In this document: piece by piece, positions 44,785-64,000 of the stretch
Layout of the letters: every line of letters starts with the position of its first letter
How positions within the stretch are numbered: the first letter of the stretch is position 1
NCBI GenBank assembly: GCA_965240325.2
Contig: OZ251231.1
Span: forward strand, 1,364,001 to 1,428,000
Length of the DNA stretch: 64,000 bases
DNA from: Rebecca billardiae RCC1528
Lineage: Eukaryota > Protista > Haptophyta
Direction of reading: 5' to 3'
Made by a program: the position numbers and the translations under genes
Notes under the pieces: generated by a model
What the model was told of the DNA's origin: nothing
Seen by the model: the letters and a program-made list of their open reading frames with translations, nothing else
Databases searched by the model: none

Positions 44785-44964
44785 GCCGCCGCTGATGAGT
44801 GTCACGATTTACGATGATGATGATCATGCGCGCTCATGCTCATGCTGGCTGCGCTAGTGAGTGCGTGATGATGATGTGATATGAAGATGTTGATGACGCG
44901 AGTCTCCTCCCGCCTCCGGGCGAGCCCAGCACGGAGCACCCGTCGGCTCCGCGTCTCAGGCGCG

Positions 44965-47900
44965 CTAGGGCGCCACGCCCTTGAACGGCGCGCCGCCGTT
45001 GCCGGGCGCGCCGCCGCCGCCGCTGGCGCTCGCCGCCGCGCCGCCGCTGAGCCGCGCGCGCGAGGGCTGCGTGCCAAACATGCGGGCGGAGGCGGCGCGC
45101 ATGTTGTCCATGCGCCTGGGCGGCGAGGACGGCCGCGCCGCGCCGCTCTCCTCGTCGCCGCCGCTCGGCGCCGGCGGCTTGGCGGGCTTCGCGCCCGTCT
45201 TGGCCGGCGACGTTGGCGGCGACGCCGGCACCATCTTGGTGAGTGTGGCGGCGCTGAGCCCGTCGGCGCGCGACGCGTCTCGCTGCCGCACCATGTTGCG
45301 GACGAGGCGCATGCGCACGCCGGCCGAGCGCTTGCGCAGCCGCGCGCGCCGCTGCGACTCGAGCAGCGACTCGCGCAGCGCGTGCGCCACCTCGATCGTC
45401 GACGCGTGCATGTGCACGCCCGGCCGGAGCACCGGCGGGTGCGTCTCAAAGAGCACGCGCGCGAGCCCGTCCGCGCCCCACTTGGCCGGGACGAAGGAGC
45501 GGCGGATGTGCTCCCACGGCGCGTAGAGCGGGTCGTTGGTGTCATGCAGCAGCACGGGCAGCACCGGCAGCTTGGGCGGCAGCCCGTCGCCCACCGACGA
45601 CGACGCGTCCGTGCCGTCGTCCAGCTCCTCAGAGTCCGGCTCATCGCGGATGCCCGCGACGGCGCACGCGTTGGCAAGCGTGCGCGCGAGCTGCGGCGAG
45701 CGCGGCCAGATGAGGAGCACAGGGCCGTTGGTGTGCGCCTGCTGCGGCGGCTGGGAGCCGCCACCGCCGCCGCCGCCGAAGAGCCCGCGGCCGCTCGGCG
45801 CCTCCGACCGCTTCCCGCCCGCCTTACCCGCTTTACCCAGCTCGTACGGCGCGCACGCGCGCACGGGCTTGGTCAGCAGCGCGGCGATGTGGGCGAGCGG
45901 CCTGGGCTCGGCGTTGGCGACGTGTTCCTCGTCGCGCTCCTGCGTCGTGCAGGGCGGCGCGCGGCGCGGAGGAGGGCGCGCGGTGCGCGTGCGCGTGAGC
46001 GCGTGAGCGCGCACGCGCGGGGCGGGCGGGCGGGCCGCCGCGCCGCCGCTTCGTCCGTCTCGGTCGGCGCGCGGGCGTGTGCGCGCTGCGCCGCCTTTGG
46101 CTCAAAGCGCCGCGCCGCCGCGCGGCGGCCTCGGCGCAGCGCGCCCCCGCTCTCGCGCGGCGCGGCGGGCGCGGCGGGCGCGGCTTCGCACCTCGTAAAA
46201 CTCGCAGCGCACGGCGCGCACGCCCGAGGTGAGCAGCTGCGGCACCTGCGCGGGCGGCACGACGGTGGCGTCGTCGCGCCGCGCGGACGAGTTGCCGCCG
46301 GCGATGCTCGAGCGGCGCGCGGAGACACTCGGCCGGTGCGGGCCGGCGCGGCCCGGCGGCTGCGGCGGCTGCCGCGCGCCGCCGCCACCGCCGCCGCCGC
46401 CCTTCTCGGTGGCTGCCGGCTTGTCGGCGCCGCCGCCCTGCCGCCCGCCCCCGCCGCCGGGCGCGTGCGCCGCGTGGTGCGCGCCGCCCATCAGCAGCGC
46501 CGAGAGCGTCTTCATGTCGCGCTCCTGATACGCCGCCTTGATGCGCCCGAGCCGCCGCTGGTCGGTAACCACGACGCCGTAACCGAACGCGTCCGCGCGC
46601 AGCAGCAGCAGCGAGTTGCCGCCGGGGGGCGGCGGCGCGGAGCGGCCGGGCTGCGGCACGGCGGAGCCCGGCGCGGCGAACGTCGCGAGCAGCGGGTCCT
46701 CCTCGGGCGCGAAGCTCGCGGAGAGCTCCGCGGTGAGCGGCACGAGGTGGCCGAGCTCGGGCGGCGCGTCGAGCGCCGAGCCCGCGCCGCGGCCGCGCAG
46801 CCGGTTGGCGTAGGCGGTGAGCACGCTCGCGGCGCGCGCGAGCCACGGCGCGCGGCGCCAGAGCGGCGCGAGGCGCGCGTACCGCGTCGAGACGGCGTGC
46901 ACGGGGATCGACGCGGCCGCGTCCTCGCGCAGCAGCGCGTGCTCGAGCACGGCGCGCAGCGGCGCCGCCTCCGCCTCCTCCTTGTCCGCCTTGAGCCCGA
47001 TCTGCAGCGTGCGCGCCTCGCCCTCGATCTCGCCCAGGTGCGGCTTGAGCCCGCCCGCGCGGCGCAGCAGCTGCGCGGCGCGCAGGTGCTCCGCGATCGC
47101 GAGCGCGGAGGCGGAGAGGTACGCGTCCTCATCCTCCGGCCGGCCGCCCTGCGCGTGCCACGGGATCATCGCCGCGTCCGGCACCGCGTCCAGCAGCGCC
47201 GCCGCCGCCGCCGAGCCCGACTCGGCGCACTGCGCGCGCAGCTGCTCGATGGTCACGCCGCCGCGCGAGGGCTTGGCGACGTACACCACCACCACCTTCT
47301 TGTCCGGCGCGAGCTGCGCCGCCTGCAGCTGCGCGAGCGCGCCGCCGTCGGCGGTGAAGTAGCCGTCGGAGATGAGCACGATCACCGCGCGCGCCTGGTC
47401 CATCCGCTCGCGCCATTTCTTCCCGGACTGGCCGATCACGAGGTCCGGGACGAGTGCGCTCACGCGCTCGCGCAGCTCGTTGGCGGGCTGCTGCCCCGAG
47501 TGCCACGCGTACGAGAGGAACGCGTGGCACCCGCCGGCGACCTGCTCGTCGAGCCGCGTCGCGCGCATCCGCGTCTTGTCCAGCCGGTCGCGCAGCACGG
47601 GCAGCTGCCGCTCCTGGTACGCGCGCCAGGGCAGCAGCAGCACGGCGGTGAGCAGCACGAGCACAAAGATACCGGTCAGGTACGCGCCCAGAATAGACTC
47701 GTACAGCGAGAGCCGCAGCCCGCCCTCGAACAGCGCCTTGGCCGACCACGCGTCGAAGCCGGCGCGGAGCGAGAGATTGTCCGCACCCTCCGAGCCCGCG
47801 GTCAGGTGCACGGCGAGGGCGCCCACGAGCATCAGCTGCATCGCGAGCTGCGCGACGAGGACGGGGTCGTTGTCGAGCGCGGACTGGAGCGGCCGGATCC

Positions 47901-50900
47901 GCGCGAGCACCGCGACGAACACCGACTGCACGAAGATCGCCGTGAGCAGCTGCGCGACCGACGCGTACGACGACGCGTCCGCGCCGCCGCCCGAGTTGGG
48001 CGCGGCGCCGAGCACCGCCACCCGCACCAGGATCACGCCGCCGACGAGGACGAGCTTGCGCAAAGTCTCCACCGCCTCCCACCAGACGGTGTGCGGCGCG
48101 AGCCCGACGCGGATGAACGAGAGCGGCGACTGCCCCGCCACCCACTCCGAGTCGTCCCTGAGCAGCACGCGGTAGAAGGCGTACGGCAGCGCGACCGAGT
48201 AGACAAACATCGCGATGTACGCAAACGGTAGGTACGCCTCGTGCTCGGCCGAGTCGAAGTCGACGGAGTAGTCGGACTTGAGCACGCGCTTCGGACGGCT
48301 CGCCTCGACGTCGACCGACTCCGTGTTCACCGCCGAGAAGAGCGACGCTGTCGCGGAGGGCAGGATGAGGTACGCGCTCATCAGGAACGGGCGGAGCACC
48401 GAGCCCACAAAGTCGCGCCGCTTGTCGAACAGCTTGGAGTGGTGCCGCGCGCGGTGGTACAGCTCGAAGAGGAGCCACACGCCGCCGAAGACGGAGAGCA
48501 CGCCGAGCGGCGCGAGCGCGATCCCGACCATCCCCGTGTGGTACCCCACGCCGATGCAGTTGAACCCGTTGAGGTACAGGTTGTCGAAGGCGAGCCAGCG
48601 GAAGCCGCCGAGCGTCTCGCGGAACGCGACCGGCAGCGTGACGCCGTACACGCGCTCGAGCAGCAGCGTGAGCTGCACGAACGCGAGCGTGGTGCGCGCC
48701 GCCACCTTGAACGAGACGACGACCGCGGGCGTGACCGCGCCCGCCAGCGCCACCTTGAGCTGCGTGAGCAGCTTGCGCGACGGCTTGGGCTTCTGCCCCG
48801 GCTTGTGCCCCTTCAGCCAGCGCGCGAGCGCGGCCATCTTCTCGTCCATCCGCCCGTGGAAGCTCGCGATGATCAGCACGACGCACACGAGCGAGAAGCC
48901 GATCATCAGCCCAAAGACGAGCTCCGCGCGGCGCGTCGCCGCCGGGCAGCGCGCGCATCGGTCGTCCGTGCCCATGAAGAAGCTGCGCGCGCGCGGGGGG
49001 CCGGCGGTCAGGCTCGCGATTGGCGCGCGGCCGGCGGCACGCACGCACGGCACGCGCGGCCGGCGGCACGCACGCGCTTGCCGCGCGCGCGCGCGCACCC
49101 GGGGTCGCACACTTCGCAGTACGGCCCACCGTGGTGCTCGGCGCACAGATCGCCGCTCTTGGCGCCCTTTGAGCCCGGGCACGCGCGCTCGCCGCGGCCG
49201 CACTCGCGCAGGTCTGCCGTGTCCTTGGAGTTGCGCCAGAAGCCGGGCTTCACCTCGAGCGTGGCGAGCGTCGAGCCCACCCTGTCGCACGTGACGGACG
49301 CGTTGCACGCGAAGCAGATTCGGTTCGACTCGTTGTACTTGCGCTCGTAGTACCCCTGCTGGCACACGCAGCCCGCCTCGGCGTCCGTCCCCTCAAACTC
49401 GGTCGTCATGAACGGGTCCACGTCCGTGCACTGCTGGCACACGTCGTTGTCGTCCGCGTCGTCCGCCGTGCGGAACGTGCCGATCGGGCACGGCTCGCTG
49501 CGCGAGGAGCGGCGGCGCCGACGCCGCGCGCACGCGGCGCGCGCGGGCGGCGGAGGGCGGACGCACGCTGAGCGCGAGTGCGCCCGCCGCGCGCTGGCCG
49601 CCGCCCGCCCAGAGGGGAGCACTCCACCGCGCGGCGCGGCGCGCGCACCAGGGCGTGTTGCCCGTGCGGCCGAGCCCGGGCGGGCACGAGCCTCTGTACG
49701 TGAAGAGGCCGCTCGCGAACGCGTCCTGCGCGCCCGTCTGGTTCTTGACGATCCGGATCGACGGCACGTCGGCAAAGTCGTTGGTGGGCTTGGGCGGCGC
49801 GACGCACCACGCGAACTGCGGCGAGATGATGCCGGGCTCGGCGCACGCCGCCTGCGCGCCCGTCGCCTCGTCCACCAAGAAGATGGTGATCTGGTCACAC
49901 GGCACGTCGCACGCGTCGCCAAAGTTGGCGCCCTGCAGGAAGAGCGGGCCCGGGTCGTTGGGGTTGAACTCCTGCGCGTTCAGGATGAGGTTGACGACGG
50001 CGGAGGGCGGCGGCGGCGAGGGCGGCGGCGGCGAGGGTGGCGGCGAGGGCGGCGGCGAGGGCGGCGGCGAGGGCGGCGGCGGCGAGGGCGGCGGCGAGGG
50101 CGGCGGCGAGGGCGGCGGCGAGGGCGGCGGCGAGGGCGGCGGCGGGCTCGGCGGCGGGCTCGGCGGCGGGCTCGGCGGCGGCGGGCTGGGCGGCGGCGAG
50201 GGCGGTGGCGAGGGCGGCGGCGAGGGCGGCGGCGTCGGCGGCGGCGGCGGGCTGGGCGGCGGGCTGGGCGGCGGGCTGGGCGGCGGGCTCGGCGGCGGCG
50301 AGGGCGGCGGGCTCGGCGGCGGCGAGGGCGGCGGCGGGCTGGGCGGCGGGCTGGGCGGCGGGCTGGGCGGCGGCGAGGGCGGCGGGCTGGGCGGCGGGCC
50401 GGGCGGCGGCGAGGGCGGCGGGCTGGGTGGCGGGCTGGGCGGCGGCGGGCTGGGCGGCGGGCTCGGTGGCGGCGAGGGCGGCGGGCTGGGCGGCGGCGAG
50501 GGCGGGCTGGGCGGCGGGAACGGCAGGCCGCGCGGCGGCGGCGGCGGCAGCGGCGGCGGGCTGGGCGGCGGGCTGGGCGGCGGGCTGGGCGGCGGGCTGG
50601 GCGGCGGCGGCGGCGGGCTCGGCGGCGGGCTCGGCGGCACGTTGAGCAGCGCCACATTCTGCACCGTCGCGCCCACCGCCTGCTGCAGCGCCGTGTTGTC
50701 CGTCTGCTCGACGGCCGCCACGACGTCCACCGGGTTGGGCTCGTCCGCCGGCTGGTAGATCTCGACGTCCACAACCGTCGAGCCGCCAGCGACGGCGATG
50801 ATCCGGATGCGCGTCTCGTCAAAGTCGCAGCCGCACTCGGCCGAGAGCTGCGCGTCGATGAAGGCGATCAGCGCCGCCTCCTGCGTGGCGTTCCACGTGC

Positions 50901-53900
50901 CCACGTCCACGTCGAACTCGTACGAGATGATGATGATCTCGCCCGGAGGCGGCGGCGAGGGCGGCGGGTGCGGCGGCGGGCTGGGCGGCGGCGAGGGCGG
51001 CGGGGTCGGCGGCGGCGGCGGCGAGGGCGGCGGCGAGGGCGGCGGCAGTGGCGGCAGGCTCGGCGACGGCGACGGCGGAGGGCTCGGCGGCGGCAGCGGC
51101 GGCGGGAGCGGCAGCGGCGACGGCGGTGGGTTCGGTGGCGGCGGGCTCGCGGCCGGGACGCTTGCACCCAGCTTGAGCATGTACACAGTGTCGTGGCCCG
51201 GTGCGCTCACGGCGGCGTCCGCTTGCCCGTCGCCGTCGAGGTCGCCGAGCAGCGCAGCGCCGTTGCCGAAGAAGTCGTCCGCCGAGAGCGGCGAGCCGAA
51301 GCCATCCGTCCCGTTGGTGATCAGCTCAGACTGGCGCACCGTGCCGTCCCTGCGGAGGTAGAGCACGAACGCCGAGCCCGTGTTCCCGTCGTAGTTCGGA
51401 GCTCCGACGAGCGCATCGGTGATGCCGTCGCCGTCAACGTCCTGGCCGGCAGAGACGGAGCGCCCAAAGAGGCTGACTCGGTCGAGCCCTGTCACGCCGC
51501 CTCCGGCAGTCGCCGACACCTTCTGCGCACCCTTGAGCGTGCCGTCGGCGCGGAGAAAGAGCGTGTACACCGCGCCGCGCTGCGGGGCTCCACCGTCAGC
51601 GTCGCTGCCCGCGCCGACCATCACGTCAGTCACGCCGTCGCCGTCGAGGTCGCCGTGCGAGGCGCAGCCGTCGCCAAACCCGAAGACACCGAACGGCGTG
51701 GGAGCCGCGCCATCAATCGTCGCGAGGCTGTGCACGACCTCCGACTTGACGGTGCCGTCGCTGTGGAGGAAGAGCACAAGCACGCTGTACGCACCCCCCA
51801 TACCGACGAGCGCATCTGGCACGCCGTCGCCGTCCAGGTCGCCGATGCCTGCTGCGCACGAACCGAGTCTGTCGTAGTCTTGCAGGGCGTAGCTCAGCCC
51901 GCCCTCTGTGCTCGAGATCTTGCTCGACGCCTTGAGGGTGGCGTCCGCGTGCATGAAGAGCACGTACGCCGCGCCGCGAGCAGTGCCGCCACCAAGGTCC
52001 GCAAAATCGCCGGCCATGATGTCGGGCACGCCGTCACCGTCCACATCGCCGAGCGCACCCAGACCAATGCCCAGCCAAATGCTGCCGTCGACGACGAGCT
52101 TCGTGTCAGCCTTGACGGTGCCGTTGGCGTTGAGCAGCAGCAAGAATACCTCGCCCACGGTGTCACTGCTGCCCACGAGGAGGTCGGGCACACCGTCGCC
52201 ATCAAAGTCGCCCAGCGGCTCGAGCGTGTTCCCAAACGCGCCCGCTGAGGCAGGGCCGACGAAGCCGCCTTCGGTGGGCGAGATGCGCACGACCGACGCC
52301 ACTGTCTCGGGCGGAGACGGCGGCGGGCTCGGCGGGCTCGGCGGCGGGCTTGGCGGCGGCGGGCTCGGCGGCGGGCTCGGCGGCGCCCTCGGTGGCGGCG
52401 GGCTCGCGGGCGGGACGCGAGCCCCGAGCTTGAGCATGTACACAGTCGTGTCGCCAGGTGCGCTCACGGCAGCGTCCGCTTGCCCGTCGCCGTCGAGGTC
52501 GCCGAGCAGCGCAGCGCCTGTGCCGAAGGTGTCGTCCGCAGAGAGCGGCGAGCCGAAGCCCTGTGTCCCGTTGGTGATCAGCTCAGACTGGCGCACCGTG
52601 CCGTCCCGGCGGAGGTAGAGCACTATCGCCGCGCCCGTTCGCCCGCCGTAGTGCGGAGCTCCGACGAGCGCATCGGTGATGCCGTCGCCGTCAACGTCCT
52701 GCCCGGCAGAGACGGAGGTCCCGAAGAGCATGTTCACCTGGTCGAGCCCTTCCACCGCGCCCCCCACTCTCGAGTTCGACGACACCTTCTGCACACGCTT
52801 GATCGACCCGTCGGTGCGCAGAAAGAGTGTGTACACGGCGCCGGCGCCGAGGTTTCCGACGTTGTCGCCGGTCGCTCCGACCATCACGTCAGTCACGCCG
52901 TCCCCGTCGAGATCGCCGTGCGAGGCGCACGAGCTGCCGAACGAAGACAACGAAAGCGCAGACGGGTCAATCGACGTCACGTTGTGCACCACCTCCGACT
53001 TGACGGTGCCGTCGCTGTTGAGGAAGAGCACAAGGACGCTCTCGGTCCCCAACTCACCCACGAGCGCATCGGGCACGCCGTCGCCGTCAAGGTCGCCGAG
53101 GCGTGCGACGCACGAGCCGAAAAGTCCAGAGTCCTGGAGGGCGTGGCTCAGCCCGCCCGCTGTCTCCGAGATCTTGCTCGACGCCTTGAGGGTGGCGTCG
53201 GCGTGGAGGAAGAGCACGTACGCTGCACCGCGAGCGCTGCCGCCGTCACCGAAGTCCAGTATGTCGCCGGCCATGATGTCGGCCACGCCGTCGCCGTCAA
53301 CGTCGCCGAGCGCATCCATGCCGTAGCCCAGCCAGAGACTGCCGGCGACGGCGAGCTTCGTGTCCCGCTTGACGGTGCCGTTGGCGTTGAGCAGCAGCGC
53401 ATACAGCTCGCCGCGTGGGTTGTTCGTGCCCACGAGCAGGTCGGGCACGCCGTCGGCATCAAAGTCGCCCAGCGGCGCGAGCGTGTACCCAAACGTGCCC
53501 TCCGAGGCAGGGCCGACGTAGCCGCCTTCGGTGGGCGAGATGCGCGAGAGTGACGCCACCGTCTTGGGCGGAGACGGCGGCGGGCTCGGCGGCGGGCTCG
53601 GCGGCGGGAGCGGCCTCGCGGCCGGCGGCACCGCGGCCGGCGGCACCGCGGCCGGGCTGGGTGGCAGGCTCGGCGGCGGGCTCGGCGGTGGGCTCGGCGG
53701 TGGGCTCGGTGGCGGGAGGCTCGGCGGCGGCGGGCTCGGCGGCGGGCTCGGTGGCGGGAGCGGCCCCGCGGCCGGCGGCACGGCGGCCAGGCTCGGTGGC
53801 AGGCTCGGCGGCGGGCTCGGCGGTGGGTTCGGTGGCGGGAGGCTCGGCGGCGGGCTCGGCGGCGGGCTCGGCCCCGCCGCCGGCGGCACCGCCCCCGTGC

Positions 53901-54210
53901 CGGGTGGCAGGCTCGGCGGCGGGCTCGGCGGTGGGTTCGGTGGCGGGAGGCTCGGCGGCGGGCTCGGCGGCGGGTTCGGTGGCGGGAGCGGCCCCGCGGC
54001 CGGCGGCCCCGCGGTCGTACTCGGTGGCAGGCTCGGCGGCGGGCTCGGCGGCGGGTTCGGTGGCGGGAGCGGCCCCATGGCCGGCGGCGATTGGCCCTGC
54101 GCTCCGATGACTATGGCGGCGAGGACCGTGAGCGCCGCGAGCGCCTGACGGCCACGACTGGACGGTAGCCCATGCACCAGTCTACCGCGGACGTTGTGTT
54201 CATGGCGCAT
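44965..54210 (-). CDS. Giant receptor-like protein (~2,908 aa): signal, Pro-rich, 2 x FG-GAP propeller, extensin-like stalks, Cys-rich repeats, multi-TM, TIR-like; introns 49498-49648, 48983-49098, 45940-46191
   Basis: Repeated FG...GDLDGDGVPD.LVG motifs and SPPP arrays; CP.G.F/CVCQQGYY/GPYCEVC Cys motifs; at least seven hydrophobic helices with WWEAVE..RKL; HAFLSY...AVIVLISDGY TIR-like segment. Three GT-AG introns join four ORFs in frame (8727 nt). Confidence 0.8.
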
Positions 54211-55402
54211 CAGCTCGAGGCCCTCGTCGGCAGCACCGCGCCGCGTGCACTGTCGCGTACGCGAGCGACCACAATTTTGGTCGCCCCGAGCCTTCGCTCC
54301 TGCGGAGATGCACCTCACGCGCACGGCAAAATGTTTCGCGCGGCGTGAGCGCTGCTCCGGCTCCCCACACGCTCGTCGCGCTCGCGCATCGGGGTGGAGG
54401 ACTGTGGTTGATTGATGATTGGCCCAGGCGTGCTGATCATGATTCATGAGGCTGCCGCCATATTATTCGGGCGAACAAAGAAGCGAGCGTTGAAGAGCGA
54501 GATGAGTACAGTATTGCACATAACTACTAGTATGAGATTCTTTCTTTCGTGAATAGCATATGAGCATACCTGAGATGGGTACAGTCAATATGCACCATTG
54601 GTCCGTTTTGAGTTCACACCACTTCGAGCCCATAGACGTATTTCATTACCGCTCATCAGCGGTAAAAATAAACTGTATGTAGTCTGAACACTGATTATTA
54701 TTAGACAGGTGAAACTCAGGCTTGATGGAATCGGGCGAATCCTCTCACGACGTGAACCTCGCGAGGTGGACGAGGCTGAAATTATGGCCCCTCGTCGACT
54801 TGTCGCCGACGAGAGGGCAACCTCGATCGTGATGTGCCTGGCAGCAGCCGTGCTTGCGAGCGCGCCTTGTGTACTGGGTGCGCCGTTGACCACAAACTCG
54901 GCAGCCCGCCCGGGAGGCGCGGAGGGCAGGGCCAGCAGTGTTGGGATCGTTGGCCGGTCATGCGCACGCGGAGGCTCGACCTGTTGGTCGGAGGCCGGCC
55001 TGGGCAGCGGCTGGGCGCTCATCATGATCTGAATGGCGACTCGTGCGCCGTCTGCCCGTCGTCTCCAAAGAGCTAGCATCAGTGTTGCCGCCATCAGTCC
55101 GTTGATAATACTACGACGACCGTGATGATGATCAGATCGATCGATACTGCTACTACTACTATATATATATACACGACTCGGCCGGTACAGTATACGTTAT
55201 ATATATATATACTACAGTCGGAGTCTAGCGCAGCTAGTCGCGTAGTATTGCACAGGCAGACTGGCGAAGGCCGACGAGAGCAGGCTGCATAGTGCATGCG
55301 CTGCGTGCGCCACCGCGCAGCCAATGTGAACGCAACGCCTTTTTCTCGCCCAGGCCGCGGCACGGGCACTCGGCTCTGTACATCTGCTGCAGCGCGGCGC
55401 CC

Positions 55403-58400
55403 TCACACGCGACCCAGACTGTCGCCTTCTGCGCTCGTCGATGCCGCCGCCGCCGCCGCCGCGCCCGTGCCACAGCCGCGCAGGCGGAACATGCTGCCCG
55501 ACGACGAGCTGAACGCCGCCCGCGCGGATGCTCGTGCGCGGCGTTGCGACGGGCTGAGGGTGCCCGGTCTGGGCGGTGCGTGCCCGCGCGAGGCGCGCTG
55601 CACGCGCACACGCTTGTCCACGTCACCCGCGTTGCGCGCCTCCACGCGCAGCCTCGGCGGCAGCGCGCGGCGGGCGTCCCCAGCGCCGCGCGGCGCGGGC
55701 GCCCGCTCCTCCCAAGGCAGCCAGCGGCACAGCGTGCTGTGAGTGCCGCCGATGGGCCGCAGGCTGTGCAGCACGGCCCGCACCTGCGCGTACTGCAGCT
55801 CGGAGCTGCCGTGCGGCGCGAACGGGAGCGCGATCACCTTGAGCACGTGCTCGAGCGCCGCCTGCACCTCGGGCGGCGAGATCCCGTGCCGCTCGAGGTA
55901 CGCCCAACCCTTGGCTGAGAAGACGGCTCGGCGCTGCAGCTGCTCCATCCACGCGGCGCCGTACGCGCTGAAGTCGAAGCCGCCGCCGATCGCGAGGATG
56001 GGCACGGTGTGCACGCCGAGCTTGTGCGCCAGCGCAATCGTGCACACGCTCGGCGCGTCCTCGAACAGGCCGGCGCCGAGCAGCACGAGCAGGTTGGGCG
56101 CGGACGCGAGCCGGGTCACTCGGTCGCGGACCCAAGCCTCAGCGCTGCCGAACGGGCCGGCCTCTGCTGATCCAGCGCCCTCCGCTTCCGTGCCGTCGGC
56201 CTCCGAGCCGCCGGGGCGCGGGGAGCGGCGGAAGCCGGCCGCGCTCAGGTGCGCAGCCGGCGCGAGCACGGAGCGCGCGCCCGCTGCGCCCAGGTGCGCG
56301 ACCGGCGCGAGCACGGAGCGCGCGCCGCGCTCCGCAGCGCTCGTCACCGCCGCGAGCCCGCTCGCAAAGTCGCTGCCGCGGCGCTCGGCCGCGGGCGCGC
56401 CCTCGGGCGGCGGCGGTGGCTGCAGCGGCGGCGGCGGCGGCAGCCCGTCAGGTGGGAGTGGTTCCATCGGAGGATGCCGCGGTGGCGATGGCGTCGGCGG
56501 CGCCCCCTCCGATTGCAGTGCCTCGAGCGGAGCGAGCCGCTGCGGCTGCGGCTGCGGCGGCGGCGGCGGCTGCGGCGGCGACAGCGGTGGCGGTGGCTTG
56601 AGCGGCGGCGGCGGTGCGGCCACCGCGTCAGCCGCGGGCCCCACGCACGCGCCGCACGAGGCCTCGCCGCCCTCCCCACCCTCGCCATGCCGCCGCTCCT
56701 CCTCCGGCAGCCGCCACTCGCGCTGCGAGAGCGCGAGCACGCCGCGGTACGGGGCCATCAGCCGGCGCGCGCCGTACCGGTGGTGGACGGCGAGGATGAG
56801 CTTGATCACGTGCGCGTTGCACAGGTCCCGGGGCGAGCAGACGAGCAGCGCGAGCGTCGAGCTCAGCTCGGACGGCCCGAGCGACGGCCTGATCCACCGG
56901 CGGCACACCGGCGCCGTGTTGAGCTCCAGCGGCGCGCTCGCGAGCACCTGCGCGCGCGCGTCGCTCAGAAAGTCGGCACGGAATCGCATGAGCGCGGCCG
57001 CCGCGTTTGGCTGCACAAAGTCGGAGTAGGCGGGGCGCTGGGTGCGGGGCGGCGCCGTCGTTGCGGCCCGCGCCGCCGCCGCGGGCGCGACGGCGCGCCG
57101 CCCGGCCTCCTCCGCGCCCGCGCTCTCCACCGCGAGCTCGCGCACAGCGCCGCGCGCGCTCGCTGCAGCCCGCTTTGGCCGTAGGCGCGGCCGCGTGACT
57201 GGCGACGGCCGCGGCCGCGTCAGCGAGGCCGAGCGCGGCTGCGCGGAGCCGAGCTCGATGACGCGGCGCGCGATGCGCTCGGCCTGCGCCCACTGCCGCT
57301 CCTCCGGCCCGCTCCGCTCGAACTCGAGCCTCGGCTCGAGCGCCGAGAGCGACGCCAGCGCCTCGCGCACCTGCGGCTCACTCGCGCCCGTCTGCTCGGT
57401 CACGATGCCGAGCCCTTCCGCGCCGAGGGCGGCGAGGGTGGCGGAGATGGCGTCGGCGTGGGCGGGCGGGAGGTGGAGCGGCGCGCGGCGGCACGCGGTG
57501 TCGTACATCCACACCGGCACGAGCGGCTTCCCCAGCATCCACGCCGCCACCACCTCGCACATCACCCACGGCCGGTGCAGCACGCTCGGCGAGCACAGCA
57601 GCACGACCACGCGCGAGCGCACCACCGAGCGGAGCAACTCGCTCAGGTCGACGAGGTCGTCCGAGTCGAGGAAGATGGGCACGGTGGGCGGCGCGCCCGC
57701 GCGCGCGGCCGCGCCCGACCCTTTCGCCGGCAGCACGAGCTGGCGCAGCAGGTGCTTGAGCAGCCGCGCCGCGTCGCCCTCGTCGCCCTTGTAGTGAGAC
57801 AGGAAAATGCACGGCGGCATGTTGGCCGGCGTGGCGCGCGACTCGCGCGCGTGCACGTCGGCGAGGGTGCGCGTGCGCTCGCGCACGGCGCGCGCGAGGA
57901 GCGGCGTGCACACGCACGCGCACGCGCACGCGCCCAGCGCGAGCGCGATCAGCGTGAGCGCCGGCAGCTCGGTCACCACGCGCACGCCACCCGGCTCGGC
58001 GTCGGCGGCCTCGTCGGCGCCGCTGTTGCCGCCGCCGCGGCTGTCGTCGGGCGCGGCCGCGACGTCGGGCTCGACTTCGTACTCGGCGGACCACCAGAAG
58101 CCGAGCGGCATCATCTCCCGCTCGGGCGGGTACTGGCTCTTGTCTGTCTCGAAGTGCACGAGCACGCCGCGCTGCTGCGCCGGCGGCAGCGCGCCAAACA
58201 GCGCGTGCGAGCGCACCGCCTCGGCCGCGGCGCCGCCGGGCGCGAGCAGCTCGGCCGCTCCGAGGAAGAGGGTGGTCGGGCTGGCGCAGTCGACGCCCCA
58301 GAAGCCGGGCCTGCACTCGCACTGCCCCGGCGTGCCCGTCGCGTAGATCGCGTTCGCGCACACGCCCTGGTTGCGGCACTCCTGGTCGGCGAAGCAAAAG

Positions 58401-61203
58401 TCGCCGCCTCGCCACACCAGCCCGACGTGCGTGACGGATGCGGACAGGTCGGTGACGACCGTCGCGTCGAGGAAGGGCTCGGGCCGGTAGCGCGCGGCGT
58501 CGAGCAGGCCGAAGCGGAGACCGCGGAGCGCGCGCGGCGCGCCGTCCGCGCGCGACGACGCGACCGTCGCCGGCGGCGCGATCGCCCAGCGGCAGTCGAG
58601 CGAGTGCCAGTTGGTGGCCGCGGCGGCGCCGCCCGCGGCGCGCTCGGCTGGCGGCCACGACCAGAGCTCGCCCTCGCGCGCCGTGTGCAGCACGGGCAGG
58701 CCCGGGAGGCACGCGGCGGCCCAGCAGTTGTCGCCGTACCGGCCCGCGTCGCACTCGCACGTGCCGTCCGCGCGGCACGTCCCCGCGCCGCTGCACACCT
58801 CGCCGCCCGCCGCCTGCGCGCACCCGGCGCCGCCGGCGTCGCGCGCCCAGAAGCGCGCGTCGAAGCGCGAGGGCGCCGACACCTCCGAGGCGCGCAGCGT
58901 GAGGAGCATCTCGACGCGGCCGTCGGGGCTGCCGCCGCCCGCCGCGGCGGCGATCTCGAGCTGCAGCCGCGTCGGCGAGATCGCCGTGGGCAGCTCGTGC
59001 CGCGAGAAGTTGCCCGAGAGCGAGACGACGAGCGCGTCGAGCAGCGGCGCGCGCCCCGCGTACACGTTGATGTGCGCGGCCGACGGCAGCACGTCGATGG
59101 CGTCGAAGTCGAGGACGGGGAGCGAGCCGGGCGGCGCGGAGAGGACCCAGCGGCACTCAGCCGTGCGCAGCGCCGCGTACCCCGGCAGGCTGTACGACCC
59201 GTCCGTCAGGCCGTACGCCGCCTCGCCGGGCGCGCGCCGCGCCTCGACCGTGCCCATGCACCGGCCCGCGCCGCACGCCGAGCCGTAGAAGCCGCCGTCG
59301 CACTCGCACGCGAGGCCGTCGGGCGCGCACTCGCCGTGGCCGCTGCACGAGGCGGCGCGCGAGACGCACGCGGACGCGCTCACGTTGAGCGCCACGCCCT
59401 GCTGCACCCAGCCGCCCAGCGGCTGGTACACGTGGTCGTCGAGCTGCAGCACGATCAGCAGCGGCGGCGGCGCGAGCACGGCGAGAGGCGCGAGCACCGC
59501 GCGCGAGTCCTCGCCGCGCTCGGCGGCGCGGGCGGAGATCATGCCGGTGTAGTCGGCGACGAGCGTGGCGTTGCCCGCGCGCGCCGCCTGCGCCGCCGCC
59601 CACGCCTGCGCCACGCCGTCGCGCGCCTGCTCCGCCGAGAGCTCCACGCGCGCGGCCGCGAGCGCGCCCGGTCCGGAGAAGACGCGCAGCGTGTCCGTCA
59701 GCACATCGAGCGCGAGCAGGGAGAGCTCGACGCGGACGAGGTCGGCGGCGGAGGCGCGGACGAGCACCGCGCAGGTGCGCGCGGTGCGGTTGGACGCGCT
59801 GCTCGCGAGCATCGACACCCAGTGCGCGCCGCCCACCGACGCGCCGCCCAGCTCGAGCTCGGCCACGTGCGCGCGGTTGCAGCCGGCGTCGTCGGCGCCG
59901 GCCGCCAGCGGCGCGCCCTCCGAGTCGGAGAGGCTGAGCCGCTCGAGGAGCGCGTCGGACGGCACGGGCCCGGCGAGCTCGGCCGCCTCGGGCAGCCCCT
60001 CCAGCCGCGCCTCCAGCGCGGCGCGCACCCAGCGCGCGTCAAACCAGCCGGCCACGTCCTCCCCCGCGCGCCTCGCAAGCAGCTTCTGCTCGAGGATGAA
60101 GTCGAGGACGTTGGCCGCCTCGGCGAGGAGGCCGGCGCCGAACCACGCGGCGGAGAGCTGCGTGCGCGCCGAGACGAACGTGTACTGCCGTAGCCCGATC
60201 GGCTCGTCGCGCACCATCGCGCGCGCCTCCGCCTCCTCGGCGGCGGTGAGGTTGAGCGTGCGCGCGCTCACGTTGAGCGCGCGCGCCAGCCAGCGCTGCG
60301 CGTCGACGCCCGCGCGCCGCCGCCCTGCGAGAGCGCGTCGGCGTGCCGGCGCGCGTGGACGAGCGCGGCCACGTTGAGCGCCGCGGCCCCCTCGAACACC
60401 GTCCAGCCCGCGCGCGCGCCGCCCTCCTCCTCCTCGTCCCCGCCGCCCGGCAGCTCCCACGCCATCGGCTCGACGCGCAGGCTGCGCTCCGCCGCGTCCG
60501 CGACGCGGACGAAGCGCTGGACGGCCTCGGGGTGGTCGCGGGCGAAGGCGTCGCGCGCGACGACGATGTTGAATGCGCGCCGCCCCCACGCGCCCAGCTG
60601 CCCCGACGTGATCACCACGTGCCCGCCCGCCCTGGTCACGTGCTCGAGCGCCGTGCCCCACGTGAACGCCGCGTCGATCTCGCCCTCGTCCCACGCGCGC
60701 TCGATGGCGTCGGGGTCGAGGAAGCGGATGTCGACGCGCGACGGCGGGATCGAGAGGATGTCGAGCAGGAAGAGCAGGTGGTAGTGCACCGTCGAGTGCC
60801 GGCTCACAGCCACCACCTTGCCGCTCAGGTGCGTCGGGTTGACGATGCCCGAGCCCGCGCGCGCCACGAGCGCGGACGTGCCGCCCGCCTCGGAGAGGAT
60901 GTATATGGCGGTGAAGCGCAGGCGACGCGCGGTGCCGAGCACCCACGGTGGGCTGCCCACGACCGAGATGTCCAGGTCCTCCGCCTGAAGCATCGCGTTG
61001 GCATGAGCCCCCGTCTGCATGTTGTAGAACGAGAAGCGGTACGAGTGGTTGGTGCCCTCGAAGTCGAGGAGGCGGTACGTGGCGATGGCGGCGAGCGGGG
61101 TGGTCTCGGAGAAGAAGGCGCCCACGTTCACGCGCACCACGCCCGCAAGCGCCACCGCCGGCGCGAGCAGCAGCGCCACGCCGCGCAGCATCCCACCGCG
61201 CAT
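55403..61203 (-). CDS. Single-pass receptor (~1,907 aa): signal, TauA-like substrate-binding domain, CUB-like/EGF modules, TM, TIR, degenerate second TIR; probable intron 60296-60372
   Basis: GSPP...ALVAR...LSGKVVAV...STVHYHL...AWDEGEIDAAFTW resembles TauA/SsuA. Three EGF motifs (CECDGGFYGSAC, CECDAGRYGDNC, CECRPGFWGVDC) and CUB-like CRW segments. TM at ~57896-57960, then IFLSHYK...IFLDSDDL...VVVLLCSPSVLHRPWVMCEVVAA. Confidence 0.82.
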
Positions 61204-61454
61204 GATACCCGCCCGCGGTTGGAAGGGTGTCGGACGGACAGCTGGTGAGCGCAAGGCGAGCCGAACCGACGTCGTAGAATGGCGGGCCATAATTCTACAG
61301 TACGTGTCTTCGGCGCGATCTCGATCTCACCAGCCTGAGATCGCCCTTGCCAATCTGAAATCGAGCCGGATCTCTCGGGTGGGGAAAGGGGAAGGTGTCC
61401 TGTCCAGCGGAGGACAGGGCGGTGGCAACGGCGTGCAGAACTCGGCTCTCGGCA
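61204..61454. promoter_or_regulatory. Putative bidirectional promoter
   Basis: 251-bp gap between the divergent ATGs at 61203 (-) and 61455 (+). Confidence 0.45.
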
Positions 61455-64000
61455 ATGTCGACTGCATGCGTGCACACCCTGCCCGGTGGCGGAGAATGTT
61501 CATGCGTGGCGATCTCCGTGGCCGACGGCGGCTGTCGCTGGGCTGTGGCCGTGCGCGGCGACCAATATCTTTGGCTCTACGACCTGCAGGCGGGCAAACT
61601 CGTGCGCACGATTGATGCCGGGTTTGGTGCGGGGATAACGTCTCTCGCACTCTCGAGCGCCGACGGGGGCTGGCGTTGGGTCGTGTGTGGCAATGGTCGT
61701 GGCGATCATTCTCGTAGTGGCTGGGTCTGGCTCTGGGACCTCGAGTCTTGCACGCGTGTGCTCGAGTTCGAACCTGAGTTCGATTCCAGTTGCTGCAACC
61801 GTCCATTGGGAGTGGCACGGCTGGCGATCTCTGCTGCGGACGGTGGTGCTCGATGGGCCGTTCGCTTGACAGCGCGCGAGCCGCAGTGGCTCGATTTGCA
61901 GTCGGGCGAGAGGAAGCGCATGCACCTCCCGTCTGACATGAACTGGGGGGGCAGGGACTACAAGTCGTGGTGGGGGGCGCCAGCAGGAGGACGCTGGCAG
62001 GTCCTCTGCGACCCCCACAAGAGAGACCAGCTCTCCGTCTGGGACCTGGAGCGCCTCACGCAGGTGTGCGTGATCCAGAACGACGTCAAGATGATCGCTC
62101 ATCAGGTGCCGATCTCCATCGTGGACGGGCTGTGCCGCTGGGCTGTGTCCACGTGCGAGCAGAGGCGGCTCTACTTGTGGGACCTCTCCTCGGGCGCGTG
62201 CGTGCGCTCGGTCGACGCCGACAGAGGCAGCGGCGTGACCAAGCTGACGCTCTCCGACGCCGATGGCGGCTGCCGCTGGGTGCTGTGCGGCACAGCCAAC
62301 GGCCAGTTGGGGCTGTGGGACATGCAGGCGGGCGAGTGTGTGCGCACGCTCGAGGGCCACACGGGCGCGATCACAGAGCTGCAGTTCTCGAGCGCGGACG
62401 GCGGCTGCCGCTGGGCGCTATCCGGATCGCAGGACGGCACTCTGCGGCTGTGGTCCCTCGCCATGCCCACCCGCGCTGCGCGCCCGATATGCGGGCTGCC
62501 AGTGCGACCATGTGCTGGCGTGGTCGAGGCGATGGATGCGCTGAGGTGGGCAAGCGCGCGCGCGCGCAAGGCGCTCTCGGCCGCTCTGGACACGATTCGC
62601 GCGCGCACCAACGGGAAGAGCCCGCCCGACGTCACGCTGATCAAGCGACGCGACGCGCTGCGTGCCGAGCTGTGCGCCGCCCTCGAGGCGCAGAGCGCTT
62701 CGGCGCGAGCCGCGCTCGCCGACGCGCGCGCGCAGGCGGAGGCTCTGCGAGGCGAGGCGCGCGCGCTGCTCGCCGCGCTCGAGCTGAGCGAGACGGCCGC
62801 GGAGCCGCTGGCGTCTGGGGCGACGCTGGCATCGTCGCTCTCCCTGTGCATCGGCCGCGCCATCCGCGCGCACGACCAGGCGTCAGCAGCTGACCTCGCT
62901 GGGCGTGGGGCCGTGAGGGCCGCTTGGCACGCGGTGCACGCGGCGGTGGCGCTCGCCGCAGCCGCGGCGCACACCAGTCCAGGGAACTCGGCACTCGCGT
63001 CCGCGTGGGCGCGGGCCATCCCCATACTTCACGCGGCTGTGGCAGCGCCTGCGGCTGAGGCCTCGCTCGCCGACGTAGCTCTCGCCCACGCGAGCGCGTG
63101 CGACGAGCTCGCGGCCACGGCGGACGCCGCACGCGGCCTCGCTCGCGAGGTGGCCAGCGAGGCGGAGGCGGAGCTGCGCACGGCGCGCGCGCTGCCGACG
63201 ACTGAGATCGCGCACGGCCTGGAGCTTCGCGAGAGCGAAGGCGCGGCGCGCCGAGCGAGGCGCGCGCTCCGCGACGCACGGCGCACGCTGGAGGACGCGC
63301 ACGAGGACAGCGGCGACGTCGACGCGGCGCAGCGAGCGCTCGTCGACGCACGGCGCGCCGCGCAGCGCGCGCAGCGCGTACACGAGGCAGCCGTCGCGCG
63401 CCTCTTCGAGTGGGCTGCCGGACCGTTCCCCGAGCTGCCGGGCATTCTGCCTGAGATCTTTGGCGGCGGCGGGGAGGCGCTGCCGCCGGGCGCGCGCGCC
63501 GGCCTGCTGCACGGGCGCTCGCTCGAGCAGTACGAGCGCATCACGTGGCCCGACGGCGCGGAGCCGCCGCGTGGGCGGCACGAGGTGCTGCCGTGCACGT
63601 ACGCGGCCGAGCGCGTCGTGCTCAAGGCGTACCCGCTGGCGCGCGACTCGGAGCGGCGGGCGCTGGAGCGCGAGGCGGCCATCGTGCGCGCGCACCCGCA
63701 CCCACACGTCGCGCGCGTGCACGGCGTCTTCAGCTGCGCGCCCAGCGGCGCGGCTGAGTGGCGCGCGTACGTGCAGACGCCCCTCTACTCGGGCGGCGCG
63801 CTGAGCGGCTGGCTCGAGCGCGAAGCGACAGCGCCGCCCGAGGCTGTGCGCGGCGTGGCGCCCTGCGCGCTCCTCGACCCGAGCCATGCGCGCGTCGCCA
63901 CCACGCGCGTCTGCGCGCTGCGCCACCTCGTCGCCGCGCTCGCGCATCTGCACGCGCACGGCATCGTCCACGCCGACGTCAAGCTCGAGAACGCCTTTGT
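61455..64000 (+). CDS. WD40-repeat, helical region, protein kinase (truncated by the window end; absent from the ORF track because it has no stop)
   Basis: The frame from ATG 61455 gives LWLYDL, VWLWDL, LSVWDL, LYLWDL, LGLWDM and GHTGAIT...SGSQDGTLRLW. It then gives kinase motifs VVLK, LEREAAI..HPHVARVHGVF and IVHADVKLEN (63963-63992), in the same frame. Confidence 0.85.
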   Translation, partial: MSTACVHTLPGGGECSCVAISVADGGCRWAVAVRGDQYLWLYDLQAGKLVRTIDAGFGAGITSLALSSADGGWRWVVCGNGRGDHSRSGWVWLWDLESCTRVLEFEPEFDSSCCNRPLGVARLAISAADGGARWAVRLTAREPQWLDLQSGERKRMHLPSDMNWGGRDYKSWWGAPAGGRWQVLCDPHKRDQLSVWDLERLTQVCVIQNDVKMIAHQVPISIVDGLCRWAVSTCEQRRLYLWDLSSGACVRSVDADRGSGVTKLTLSDADGGCRWVLCGTANGQLGLWDMQAGECVRTLEGHTGAITELQFSSADGGCRWALSGSQDGTLRLWSLAMPTRAARPICGLPVRPCAGVVEAMDALRWASARARKALSAALDTIRARTNGKSPPDVTLIKRRDALRAELCAALEAQSASARAALADARAQAEALRGEARALLAALELSETAAEPLASGATLASSLSLCIGRAIRAHDQASAADLAGRGAVRAAWHAVHAAVALAAAAAHTSPGNSALASAWARAIPILHAAVAAPAAEASLADVALAHASACDELAATADAARGLAREVASEAEAELRTARALPTTEIAHGLELRESEGAARRARRALRDARRTLEDAHEDSGDVDAAQRALVDARRAAQRAQRVHEAAVARLFEWAAGPFPELPGILPEIFGGGGEALPPGARAGLLHGRSLEQYERITWPDGAEPPRGRHEVLPCTYAAERVVLKAYPLARDSERRALEREAAIVRAHPHPHVARVHGVFSCAPSGAAEWRAYVQTPLYSGGALSGWLEREATAPPEAVRGVAPCALLDPSHARVATTRVCALRHLVAALAHLHAHGIVHADVKLENAF

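What the first reader, a model, noticed from the sequence alone, without database searches (positions are those of the whole stretch)
55403..61203. Bacterial TauA-like solute-binding domain used as the ligand sensor of a CUB/EGF-TM-TIR receptor
Seen: after a signal peptide comes a complete type II periplasmic-binding fold resembling taurine/sulfonate-binding TauA/SsuA. Its C-terminal helices (YTFVSARTQL...VLDFILEQK) lie in the next frame and are joined in frame by a 77-nt GT-AG intron (60296-60372). CUB-like/EGF modules, one TM, a Glu-bearing TIR and a degenerate TIR follow. Known: PBP folds serve as sensors in iGluRs and class C GPCRs; I know of no characterised PBP-TIR receptor. Inference: a small-molecule (sulfonate or osmolyte)-gated TIR enzyme, possibly sensing metabolites from lysed cells or bacteria.
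Basis: partly seen in the sequence, partly recalled or inferred. Interest (0 to 1): 0.82.

Follow-up and report, generated by a model that had tools for sequence, protein, structure and literature searches.

The report
Algal TauA-like sensor fused to TIR
A GC-rich (haptophyte-like) alga has a real gene for a single-pass surface protein that joins a bacterial-type small-molecule binding domain (nearest to the taurine binder TauA, but with a changed pocket) to an internal TIR immune-type enzyme domain. It belongs to a widespread, apparently undescribed set of marine protist receptors built on the same sensor.

Summary
The observation largely holds. On the minus strand there is a signal peptide and a full-length TauA-clade solute-binding domain. 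Its last helices lie in the next reading frame and run on without a stop into three EGF modules with CUB-like spacers, one membrane helix and a TIR domain. The TIR glutamate aligns with the catalytic Glu of SARM1.

The frame change lies within 60293-60326. The proposed 77-nt GT-AG intron fits that interval, but no RNA run was listed. A one-base indel or another splice cannot be excluded. All models give the same architecture.

The "second, degenerate TIR" is not confirmed. It is a haptophyte-typical domain of unknown fold.

The binding domain sits in a well-supported eukaryotic clade with diatom, ichthyosporean, Picozoa and ocean-metagenome proteins. These carry the same sensor and CUB/EGF stalk but other outputs (WWE-PARP, kinase-guanylate cyclase). 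That clade replaces TauA's Gln30/Glu106/Asp205 (here Phe/Ser/Asn) but keeps the backbone anion site. Taurine is therefore unlikely to be the ligand; a sulfonate-type anion without an amine is my guess.

None of the 15 long homologues scanned with Pfam carried a TIR. The scan already reported a paralogue on another piece of this genome (s1-355033). Ligand-gated TIR signalling is inference, not shown.

The parts
61138..61203 (-). Start codon and signal-peptide-like N-terminus (22 residues, basic start then an Ala/Leu/Val-rich stretch)
   Evidence: Hydrophobic window at residues 4-29. Translation checked. The GC3 coding signal rises at about 61200, favouring this ATG over the one at 61290.
60373..61137 (-).
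   Evidence: Pfam NMT1 E 5.7e-8. TIGR01729 E 8.9e-41. PDB 6ssy TauA E 6e-26. Metagenomic TauA hits at 35% identity, E 1e-30.
60293..60326 (-). Interval that must contain the change of reading frame
   Evidence: The exon-1 frame has no A/T at third codon positions from 60574 down to 60293. The long-ORF frame has none from 60325 to 60192.
60296..60372 (-).
   Evidence: GT and AG are present and the frame is restored. Its interior keeps the exon-1 codon pattern (A/T 4/8/0 at codon positions 1/2/3; about 3 nats in favour of coding). Other likely introns in the window are also short and 82-86% G+C. The end-to-end hairpin is no better than shuffles (z +0.43).
60002..60295 (-). C-terminal helices of the binding domain, in the long-ORF frame
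   Evidence: Aligns to the TauA C-terminus. On its own it hits TauA profile positions 268-334, E 1.7e-7.
59357..59899 (-). First CUB-like spacer module
   Evidence: Internal similarity to the second module (28% identity). Profile-profile match to the CUB domains of homologues, probability 62%, E 7.7e-5.
59258..59353 (-). EGF-like module 1
   Evidence: Pfam EGF_2 reports three stretches; only the best stretch's position (EGF 2) was given. Assigned here from the cysteine pattern in the checked translation.
58802..59257 (-). Second CUB-like spacer module
   Evidence: hhalign against homologues' CUB domains. The ectodomain matches Chromosphaera P0140 at E 1.3e-10.
58709..58825 (-). EGF-like module 2 (best Pfam stretch)
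   Evidence: EGF_2 E 7.5e-7, 29.8 bits against a cut-off of 22.1.
58286..58399 (-). EGF-like module 3, preceded by a shorter CUB-like remnant (58397-58720)
   Evidence: EGF_2 and EGF_TEN hits on 57830-59170. Translation checked.
57893..57967 (-). Single transmembrane helix, followed by basic residues
   Evidence: Kyte-Doolittle peak of 2.3 at residues 1054-1078. There are 7 N-x-S/T sites before it and none after it.
57302..57844 (-). Cytoplasmic TIR domain; the catalytic-position Glu codon is at 57554-57556 (Glu1191 in the 77-nt model)
   Evidence: TIR_2 E 3.4e-6, 28.0 bits equal to the cut-off; ThsB_TIR 21.0 against 21.2. PADLOC ThsB E 8e-4. Atlas TIR clusters of haptophytes score 0.95. 42% identity to the TIR of P0179. 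The profile hits 8wcf TIR at E 7e-4 and SARM1 TIR at E 3e-3 with the Glu aligned.
56387..56629 (-). Proline-rich linker
   Evidence: Translation. GC3 is ambiguous here.
55697..56209 (-).
   Evidence: Atlas: haptophyte clusters score 0.96, and one cluster that is 49% TIR_2 scores 0.93. No Pfam, PADLOC or NCBIfam hit. BLAST to TIR1 gives E 0.91. AF2 pLDDT 41.
55403..55405 (-). Stop codon of the long ORF. The coding signal already fades from about 55740, so the true 3' end is uncertain.

Best explanation
This is one gene for a type I single-pass membrane protein. From the N-terminus it has a signal peptide, an extracellular TauA-clade class II solute-binding domain, three CUB-like/EGF spacer units, one membrane helix, a cytoplasmic TIR domain with the catalytic-position glutamate, a low-complexity/proline-rich linker, and a haptophyte-typical C-terminal domain.

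The binding domain belongs to a eukaryotic receptor clade. In that clade the backbone anion site of TauA is kept (Gly61, Gly79, Ser131-Thr132, Trp176), but the side chains that hold taurine are replaced (Gln30 to Phe, Glu106 to Ser here and Gln in most relatives, Asp205 to Asn).

Most likely working (inferred, not shown): a small anionic metabolite, probably sulfonate-like and lacking a cationic amine, closes the two lobes. The change passes through the stalk and membrane helix, alters TIR self-association, and so switches on NAD+-dependent TIR signalling.
For: Shown:
- TauA homology of exon 1.
- Continuation of that homology in the long-ORF frame.
- An unbroken GC3 coding signal of 0.94-1.00 in almost every 150-nt window that switches frame only within 60293-60326 and then runs to about 55650.
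- EGF modules, membrane helix, and N-glycosylation sequons on the outer side only.
- TIR hits and the Glu aligned with SARM1.
- The query's binding domain falls in a clade of 41 rows (SH-aLRT 100) with 19 of 20 fused eukaryotic proteins, apart from 117 bacterial-type TauA.
- Those relatives carry the same sensor and CUB/EGF stalk on WWE-PARP or kinase-guanylate cyclase outputs, and come from Thalassiosira, Chromosphaera, Picozoa and ocean metagenomes.
- The pocket signature is conserved within the clade and differs from bacteria: Q-E-T-D in 46 bacterial rows, E106 in 112 of 117, against F-(Q/E/S)-T-(N/M/Q/I) in the eukaryotic clade. The residue roles come from PMC6906117.

The receptor guanylate-cyclase-like relative P0140 supports a sensor role by analogy.
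Against: - No RNA evidence. No run was listed, so splicing and expression are unproven.
- The 77 nt look coding in the exon-1 frame, so the assembly may carry an indel or the gene a recent frameshift.
- TIR support is by sequence only. The AF2 model was poor (pLDDT 52) and Foldseek gave no significant match; plant TIR domains lead the list at E 0.6-3.
- None of the 15 long homologues scanned with Pfam has a TIR, so this pairing is not shown to be conserved outside this genome.
- The ligand, the gating and the NADase activity are all inference.
Confidence: 0.6

Rival explanations
1. The frame break is real and unspliced. The locus is then either a recently frameshifted pseudogene or two separate products: a secreted TauA-like protein ending at 60268, and a downstream ORF.
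For: The exon-1 frame keeps a perfect coding-like third-position pattern through the proposed intron up to 60293. The likelihood favours coding over a uniform 84% G+C model by about 3 nats. No RNA run was listed.
Against: The TauA fold would be cut before its last helices, which are encoded in the other frame directly downstream. The downstream frame stays open for 1630 codons with GC3 near 1.0. Relatives in other protists have the same sensor-stalk order as single proteins, some from transcriptomes. GT and AG are at the right places, and other introns here are also short and GC-rich.
Confidence: 0.1
2. The protein is real but is not a ligand-gated enzyme. The binding domain serves as a capture, adhesion or dimerisation module (as amino-terminal domains do in glutamate receptors), and the TIR acts only as a protein-protein adaptor.
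For: Three of four taurine-contacting side chains are replaced. Many TIR domains act as scaffolds (established knowledge). TIR catalysis rests on one aligned Glu.
Against: The altered pocket is conserved across a deep eukaryotic clade while the backbone anion site is kept, which argues for retained ligand binding. The same sensor is wired to PARP and guanylate-cyclase catalytic outputs in relatives. The W-x-x-x-E motif of NAD-cleaving TIRs is present.
Confidence: 0.2
3. It is a taurine receptor: the domain binds taurine as bacterial TauA does.
For: TauA models score highest: TIGR01729 E 8.9e-41 against SsuA_fam 6.7e-23. The best solved match is TauA.
Against: Glu106, without which E. coli TauA shows no taurine binding, is Ser here. 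Asp205 is Asn and Gln30 is Phe. The score is far below the equivalog cut-off, 140 against 304 bits.
Confidence: 0.05

Closest known systems
Bacterial taurine-binding protein TauA (E. coli, PDB 6ssy; TIGR01729)
   Same: Same fold and clade, with a full-length match once the two frames are joined. The backbone sulfonate site (Gly61, Gly79, Ser131-Thr132) and Trp176 are kept.
   Different: It is not a free periplasmic partner of an ABC importer but the ectodomain of a eukaryotic membrane protein. Gln30, Glu106 and Asp205 are replaced by Phe, Ser and Asn. The score is below the equivalog cut-off.
Unnamed protist proteins with a TauA-like domain, CUB/EGF stalk, membrane helix and WWE-PARP or kinase-guanylate cyclase (e.g. 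Thalassiosira sp. NH16 P0167, Chromosphaera perkinsii P0140, Picozoa P0170)
   Same: The binding domain is in the same clade (SH-aLRT 100) with the same Phe30/non-Asp205 pocket signature. The order of sensor, CUB/EGF stalk and membrane helix is the same.
   Different: The cytoplasmic output here is a TIR plus a haptophyte-typical domain. None of the 15 long relatives scanned with Pfam has a TIR. Identity is only 33-38%.
Toll-like / interleukin-1 receptors and SARM1 (TIR proteins)
   Same: Single-pass receptor layout with a cytoplasmic TIR. The W-x-x-x-E motif aligns with the catalytic Glu of SARM1.
   Different: There is no LRR or Ig ectodomain; the sensor is a solute-binding domain. The TIR fold is not confirmed structurally.
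Venus-flytrap receptors (glutamate receptors, class C GPCRs, natriuretic-peptide receptor guanylate cyclases, bacterial BvgS)
   Same: The principle is the same: a periplasmic-binding-protein fold is used as the extracellular ligand sensor of a membrane signalling protein (established knowledge).
   Different: Those use type I (ANF_receptor) or SBP_bac_3 domains. This one uses the NMT1/TauA subgroup and a TIR output.
Gephyrocapsa (Emiliania) huxleyi transmembrane TIR proteins expressed in virus-resistant cells (PMC12489294)
   Same: Haptophyte proteins with an extracellular region and an intracellular TIR that keeps the glutamate. Atlas places this TIR among haptophyte TIR clusters.
   Different: That paper reports no NBS or LRR domains in its TIR genes and does not mention a solute-binding ('solute': 0 occurrences) domain. 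Orthology was not tested.

Membership tests
TauA, taurine ABC transporter substrate-binding protein (TIGR01729 equivalog) | Score at or above the curated equivalog cut-off | tested here: not met
   140.2 bits against a cut-off of 304.25 for exon 1. TauA is still the best-scoring family.
TauA, taurine ABC transporter substrate-binding protein (TIGR01729 equivalog) | Complete two-lobe class II binding-protein fold | tested here: met
   The joined protein covers positions 26-334 of a 335-position profile built from 77 TauA-like proteins. This is by sequence only; no structure model was made.
TauA, taurine ABC transporter substrate-binding protein (TIGR01729 equivalog) | Taurine-coordinating side chains Gln30, Glu106, Thr132, Asp205 (PMC6906117) | tested here: not met
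   Phe, Ser, Thr and Asn respectively. The Gln30 column was inferred from the alignment with bacterial homologues.
TauA, taurine ABC transporter substrate-binding protein (TIGR01729 equivalog) | Free periplasmic or lipoprotein partner of TauBC | tested here: not met
   It is continuous with an EGF/TM/TIR open reading frame in a eukaryotic gene.
TIR domain (Pfam TIR_2, PF13676) | Score at or above the gathering threshold | tested here: inconclusive
   28.0 bits for the isolated domain, equal to the threshold of 28. It scores 21.3 bits in the context of the 1630-aa protein. It is supported by the PDB profile hits and Atlas clusters.
TIR domain (Pfam TIR_2, PF13676) | Catalytic-position glutamate in the W-x-x-x-E helix | tested here: met
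   WVMCE aligns with WVHKE of the SARM1 TIR and WVKYE of 8wcf. It is conserved in P0179.
TIR domain (Pfam TIR_2, PF13676) | Flavodoxin-like alternating strand-helix fold | tested here: inconclusive
   The AF2 model has pLDDT 51.8 with a compatible order of strands and helices. Foldseek gave no significant match, with plant TIRs top at E 0.6-3.
TIR domain (Pfam TIR_2, PF13676) | NAD+ cleavage or TIR-TIR signalling activity | not testable with these tools
   Needs an enzyme assay.
CUB domain (PF00431) | Match to the family model | tested here: inconclusive
   No Pfam CUB hit at E up to 1. hhalign against the CUB domains of homologues gives probability 62%, E 7.7e-5, over the core C-x-W ... V-Y-x-G stretch.
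EGF-like domain (PF07974) | Score above the gathering threshold, with the cysteine pattern | tested here: met
   29.8 bits against 22.1, in three stretches.
Toll-like / IL-1 receptor family | LRR or Ig ectodomain | tested here: not met
   No LRR or Ig hit in Pfam scans of the whole protein.
Protist TauA-like sensor / CUB-EGF receptors (unnamed clade) | Binding domain inside the eukaryotic clade, with the Phe30 / non-Asp205 pocket | tested here: met
   Clade of 41 rows with SH-aLRT 100. This is a quick tree and the query's branch is long at 1.55.
Protist TauA-like sensor / CUB-EGF receptors (unnamed clade) | Homologous CUB/EGF stalk followed by one membrane helix | tested here: met
   The ectodomain matches P0140 at E 1.3e-10 and the P0075 group at E 1e-6. 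The membrane helix is shown.

The most novel reading that the evidence does not exclude
Marine protists have a family of surface receptors in which a TauA-derived pocket, retuned for an amine-free sulfonate or similar anion (for example isethionate or DHPS released by algae and bacteria), directly gates NAD+-consuming enzymes: TIR in this alga and PARP in diatoms and picoeukaryotes. This would be a metabolite-sensing route into immune or cell-death signalling with no described counterpart.
Probability: 0.25. Interest if true: 0.85.

Novelty: new variant of a known kind. Interest (0 to 1): 0.62.

Why it matters
Binding-protein folds as receptor sensors and TIR domains as immune outputs are each well known. 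A direct join of the two was not found in the papers searched.

If the join is functional, it gives a testable case of a eukaryotic cell reading a dissolved small metabolite through a TIR (and, in relatives, PARP) enzyme. Organic sulfonates are among the metabolites exchanged between marine algae and bacteria (my background knowledge, not checked here), and TIR genes of a related haptophyte respond to viral infection (PMC12489294).

The conserved but altered pocket gives a concrete starting point for ligand screens.

Tried and rejected
- RNA evidence: two run searches listed nothing.
- Word-based protein search over residues 1-1000 of the long ORF found nothing. Over the TIR it found only P0179.
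The junction lies in a loop absent from TauA and from the eukaryotic homologues.
- A donor at the GTGAGC that overlaps the stop at 60268 was rejected. All downstream AG sites give lengths divisible by three.
- The intron hairpin is no better than shuffles.
- AF2 models of the TIR and of the C-terminal domain were too poor to use. Foldseek on the TIR model was not significant.
- Atlas found nothing for the middle cytoplasmic stretch 56687-57064.
- PADLOC, NCBIfam and Pfam found nothing for the C-terminal domain.
- The metagenome locus scan returned only 35-36% identical loci, left unexamined.
- One PDB search used out-of-frame coordinates and is void.
- tblastn found no second copy of this TIR or binding domain in the window.

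Full report
**Gene layout.** The region 55403-61203 is coding on the minus strand. The ORF list shows a 340-aa ORF ending at a stop at 60268, and an overlapping 1847-aa ORF in another frame that runs to 55403. The window is 59-80% G+C.

Third-codon-position G+C is 0.94-1.00 in the first frame from about 61200 to about 60300. It is then 0.94-1.00 in the second frame in almost every 150-nt window down to about 55650. The exceptions are dips to 0.76-0.92 in the low-complexity stretch near 57300-56900 and the proline-rich stretch (56700-56330), and to 0.84 near 56250-56026. There is thus one continuous coding signal with a single frame change. It begins at the ATG at 61203 rather than at 61290.

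**The binding domain.**
- Exon 1 (60373-61203) hits Pfam NMT1 at E 5.7e-8, above the cut-off.
- It hits NCBIfam TIGR01729 (taurine ABC substrate-binding protein) at E 8.9e-41, ahead of SsuA_fam at 6.7e-23. At 140 bits it is far below the equivalog cut-off of 304.
- The only solved relative is E. coli TauA (6ssy, E 6e-26).
- Public proteins named taurine-binding proteins match at about 35% identity, E 1e-30.

**The fold continues in the other frame.** Aligned with such proteins, the TauA C-terminal helices align to the start of the long ORF. I built a profile from 77 TauA-like proteins. Exon 1 alone covers positions 25-249 of 335. The first 120 residues of the long ORF alone cover 268-334 (E 1.7e-7). 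The joined protein covers 26-334.

**The junction.**
- GT at 60372 and AG at 60296 exist, and removing 77 nt restores the frame.
- The exon-1 frame has no A/T at third positions from 60574 down to 60293. The long-ORF frame has none from 60325 to 60192. The switch therefore lies within 60293-60326.
- The 77 nt keep the exon-1 codon pattern (A/T counts 4/8/0 at codon positions 1/2/3). They fit a coding model about 3 nats better than a uniform 84% G+C model.
- Against that, other likely introns in the window are also short and 82-86% G+C.
- The intron's hairpin is no better than shuffles.
- Homology cannot choose among 435 alternative introns. The junction lies in a loop that TauA and the eukaryotic homologues lack.
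- An 11-mer, CGCTCAACGTG, occurs at 60370-60380 and 60269-60279, 101 nt apart. Removing 101 nt would also restore the frame, but without canonical ends.
- No RNA run was listed.

My reading is that the 77-nt intron is the most economical canonical model. A one-base assembly indel or another splice remains possible. All of these give the same architecture.

**The rest of the protein.**
- Pfam finds EGF_2 in three stretches.
- The spacer modules show the CUB core pattern. They match the CUB domains of homologues at hhalign probability 62%, E 7.7e-5. Pfam itself finds no CUB.
- One strong hydrophobic helix lies at residues 1054-1078.
- There are seven N-x-S/T sites before that helix and none after it.

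**The TIR domain.**
- The cytoplasmic domain at 57302-57844 scores TIR_2 at 28.0 bits (equal to the cut-off) and ThsB_TIR at 21.0. PADLOC ThsB gives E 8e-4.
- It lies next to haptophyte TIR clusters in the Atlas (score 0.95).
- It is 42% identical to a TIR-like segment of P0179, an ion-channel/cyclic-nucleotide-binding protein.
- A profile of the two sequences hits solved TIR domains: 8wcf at E 7e-4 and SARM1 at E 3e-3. Its WVMCE aligns with WVHKE of SARM1, which I recall as holding the catalytic Glu642.
- The AF2 model was poor (pLDDT 52). Foldseek gave nothing significant, although plant TIR domains lead the list.

**The C-terminal domain.** The domain at 55697-56209 resembles haptophyte clusters without a name (0.96) and one cluster that is half TIR_2 (0.93). 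It has no family hit, only E 0.91 similarity to the first TIR, and a poor model. 'Degenerate TIR' is therefore unproven. Coding signal fades from about 55740, so the 3' end is uncertain.

**Relatives.**
- An exhaustive search with exon 1 found 1581 proteins at E up to 0.001. Among the best 150 were many long ones.
- Pfam shows a recurring design of an N-terminal TauA-like domain followed by CUB and EGF. Several long relatives also show a TM-like segment (Pfam TM_ErbB1 hits below threshold in P0050 and P0167).
- The outputs vary: WWE plus PARP (P0050, P0167, P0170, P0202, P0208), WWE alone detected (P0095), or protein kinase plus guanylate cyclase (P0140). P0060 has an unrecognised C-terminus.
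- P0053, with ankyrin repeats and no CUB/EGF stalk, nests among bacterial-type TauA in the tree and is not counted in this design.
- Named sources are Thalassiosira sp. NH16 (MMETSP transcriptome), Chromosphaera perkinsii, Picozoa single-cell genomes and TARA/JGI metagenomes.
- In a quick maximum-likelihood tree of 158 binding domains, the query sits in a clade of 41 rows (SH-aLRT 100). That clade holds 19 of 20 fused eukaryotic proteins and is separate from 117 bacterial-type proteins. The query's branch is long, so its exact place inside the clade is unsure.
- None of the 15 long relatives scanned with Pfam has a TIR, and the window TIR matched none of the 178 proteins held (phmmer, E up to 1).
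- The scan's own notes report a paralogue with the same pairing elsewhere in this genome (s1-355033). I could not inspect it.

**The pocket.** In E. coli TauA the sulfonate is held by Gln30 and by the backbone of Gly61, Gly79 and Thr132. The amine is held by Glu106, Thr132 and Asp205. Glu106Ala abolishes binding (PMC6906117). Paper numbering equals chain index plus 21, which I checked on six residues against the alignment.
- The query has Phe, Gly, Gly, Ser, Thr and Asn at positions 30, 61, 79, 106, 132 and 205, and it keeps Trp176.
- Among the bacterial-type rows, 46 are Q-E-T-D. Glu106 is present in 112 of 117 and Asp205 in 87 of 117.
- In the eukaryotic clade, position 30 is Phe in almost all rows and never Gln. 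Position 106 is Gln, Glu or Ser. Position 205 is Asn, Met, Gln or Ile, and Asp only once.
- The pocket is therefore retuned and conserved rather than decayed. The anion site stays while the amine-binding acids are neutralised. A sulfonate-like ligand without an amine is a reasonable guess, but it is only a guess.

**Mechanism and comparison.**
- Shown: the architecture, the clade and the pocket pattern.
- Inferred: ligand-induced closure of the binding domain controls TIR association and NAD+-dependent signalling. This is by analogy with Venus-flytrap receptors and receptor guanylate cyclases, and with the guanylate-cyclase and PARP relatives found here.
- Both TIR and PARP use NAD+, which may be more than coincidence.
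- Six literature searches found no description of such a receptor.
- A 2025 study of Gephyrocapsa huxleyi describes transmembrane TIR proteins with the conserved Glu in virus-resistant cells, but no solute-binding domain.

**Verdict.** I rate this a new variant of known kinds, real as a gene, with function untested. Interest is 0.62.

**Surroundings.** Downstream on the same strand lies a giant FG-GAP/extensin-like gene, said in earlier notes to carry an unrelated TIR. tblastn finds no similarity to this TIR. Upstream, head to head on the plus strand, is a gene with a kinase-like catalytic-loop motif; no family scan was run on it.

Noticed in passing
window 44951-54447, minus strand: The neighbouring giant gene (proline-rich/extensin-like plus FG-GAP-like repeats) changes its best GC3 frame twice, near 49600 and near 49090. 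The intervals are only tens of bases wide, so the 1684-aa ORF's last ~200 nt are probably read out of frame. These are either very short GC-rich introns or assembly indels.
   Followed up: partly
window 61861-63990, plus strand: This gene lies head to head with the receptor. The frame with GC3 0.95 at 63451-63990 encodes a kinase-like catalytic-loop motif (HADVKLE); no family scan was run. Earlier scan notes call it a WD40-kinase.
   Followed up: partly
window 60370-60380, 60269-60279 and 59381-59391, minus strand: The 11-mer CGCTCAACGTG occurs three times in this gene (0.04 expected by chance). Each copy encodes Ala-Leu-Asn-Val in the local frame. Two copies flank the frame-change region 101 nt apart, and removing 101 nt would also restore the frame.
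   Followed up: partly
window 5500-5660, 26350-26420 and 26860-26990: Gaps between coding runs (likely introns) are short and 82-86% G+C, and two of the three show GTGCG-type donors and CAG acceptors. Composition alone therefore cannot separate introns from exons in this genome.
   Followed up: partly
P0179 (Logan contig, 1004 aa): An ion-transport (PF00520) plus cyclic-nucleotide-binding (PF00027) protein carries a C-terminal segment 42% identical to this TIR, including the W-x-x-x-E motif. This is another unusual TIR fusion.
   Followed up: partly
P0050, P0167, P0170, P0202, P0208: The commonest output on the TauA-like/CUB/EGF receptor stalk in other protists is WWE plus a PARP catalytic domain. 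Like TIR, PARP is an NAD+-using enzyme.
   Followed up: partly
P0189 and P0193 (JGI metagenomes): In these relatives, a fragment of an ANF_receptor (type I binding-protein) domain precedes the TauA-like domain. This suggests receptors with two different binding-protein sensors in tandem.
   Followed up: no
window 55403-55740, minus strand: The last ~110 codons of the long ORF lose the GC3 signal and read as Arg/Ala-rich low-complexity sequence. The true C-terminus may be set by an unrecognised terminal intron.
   Followed up: partly
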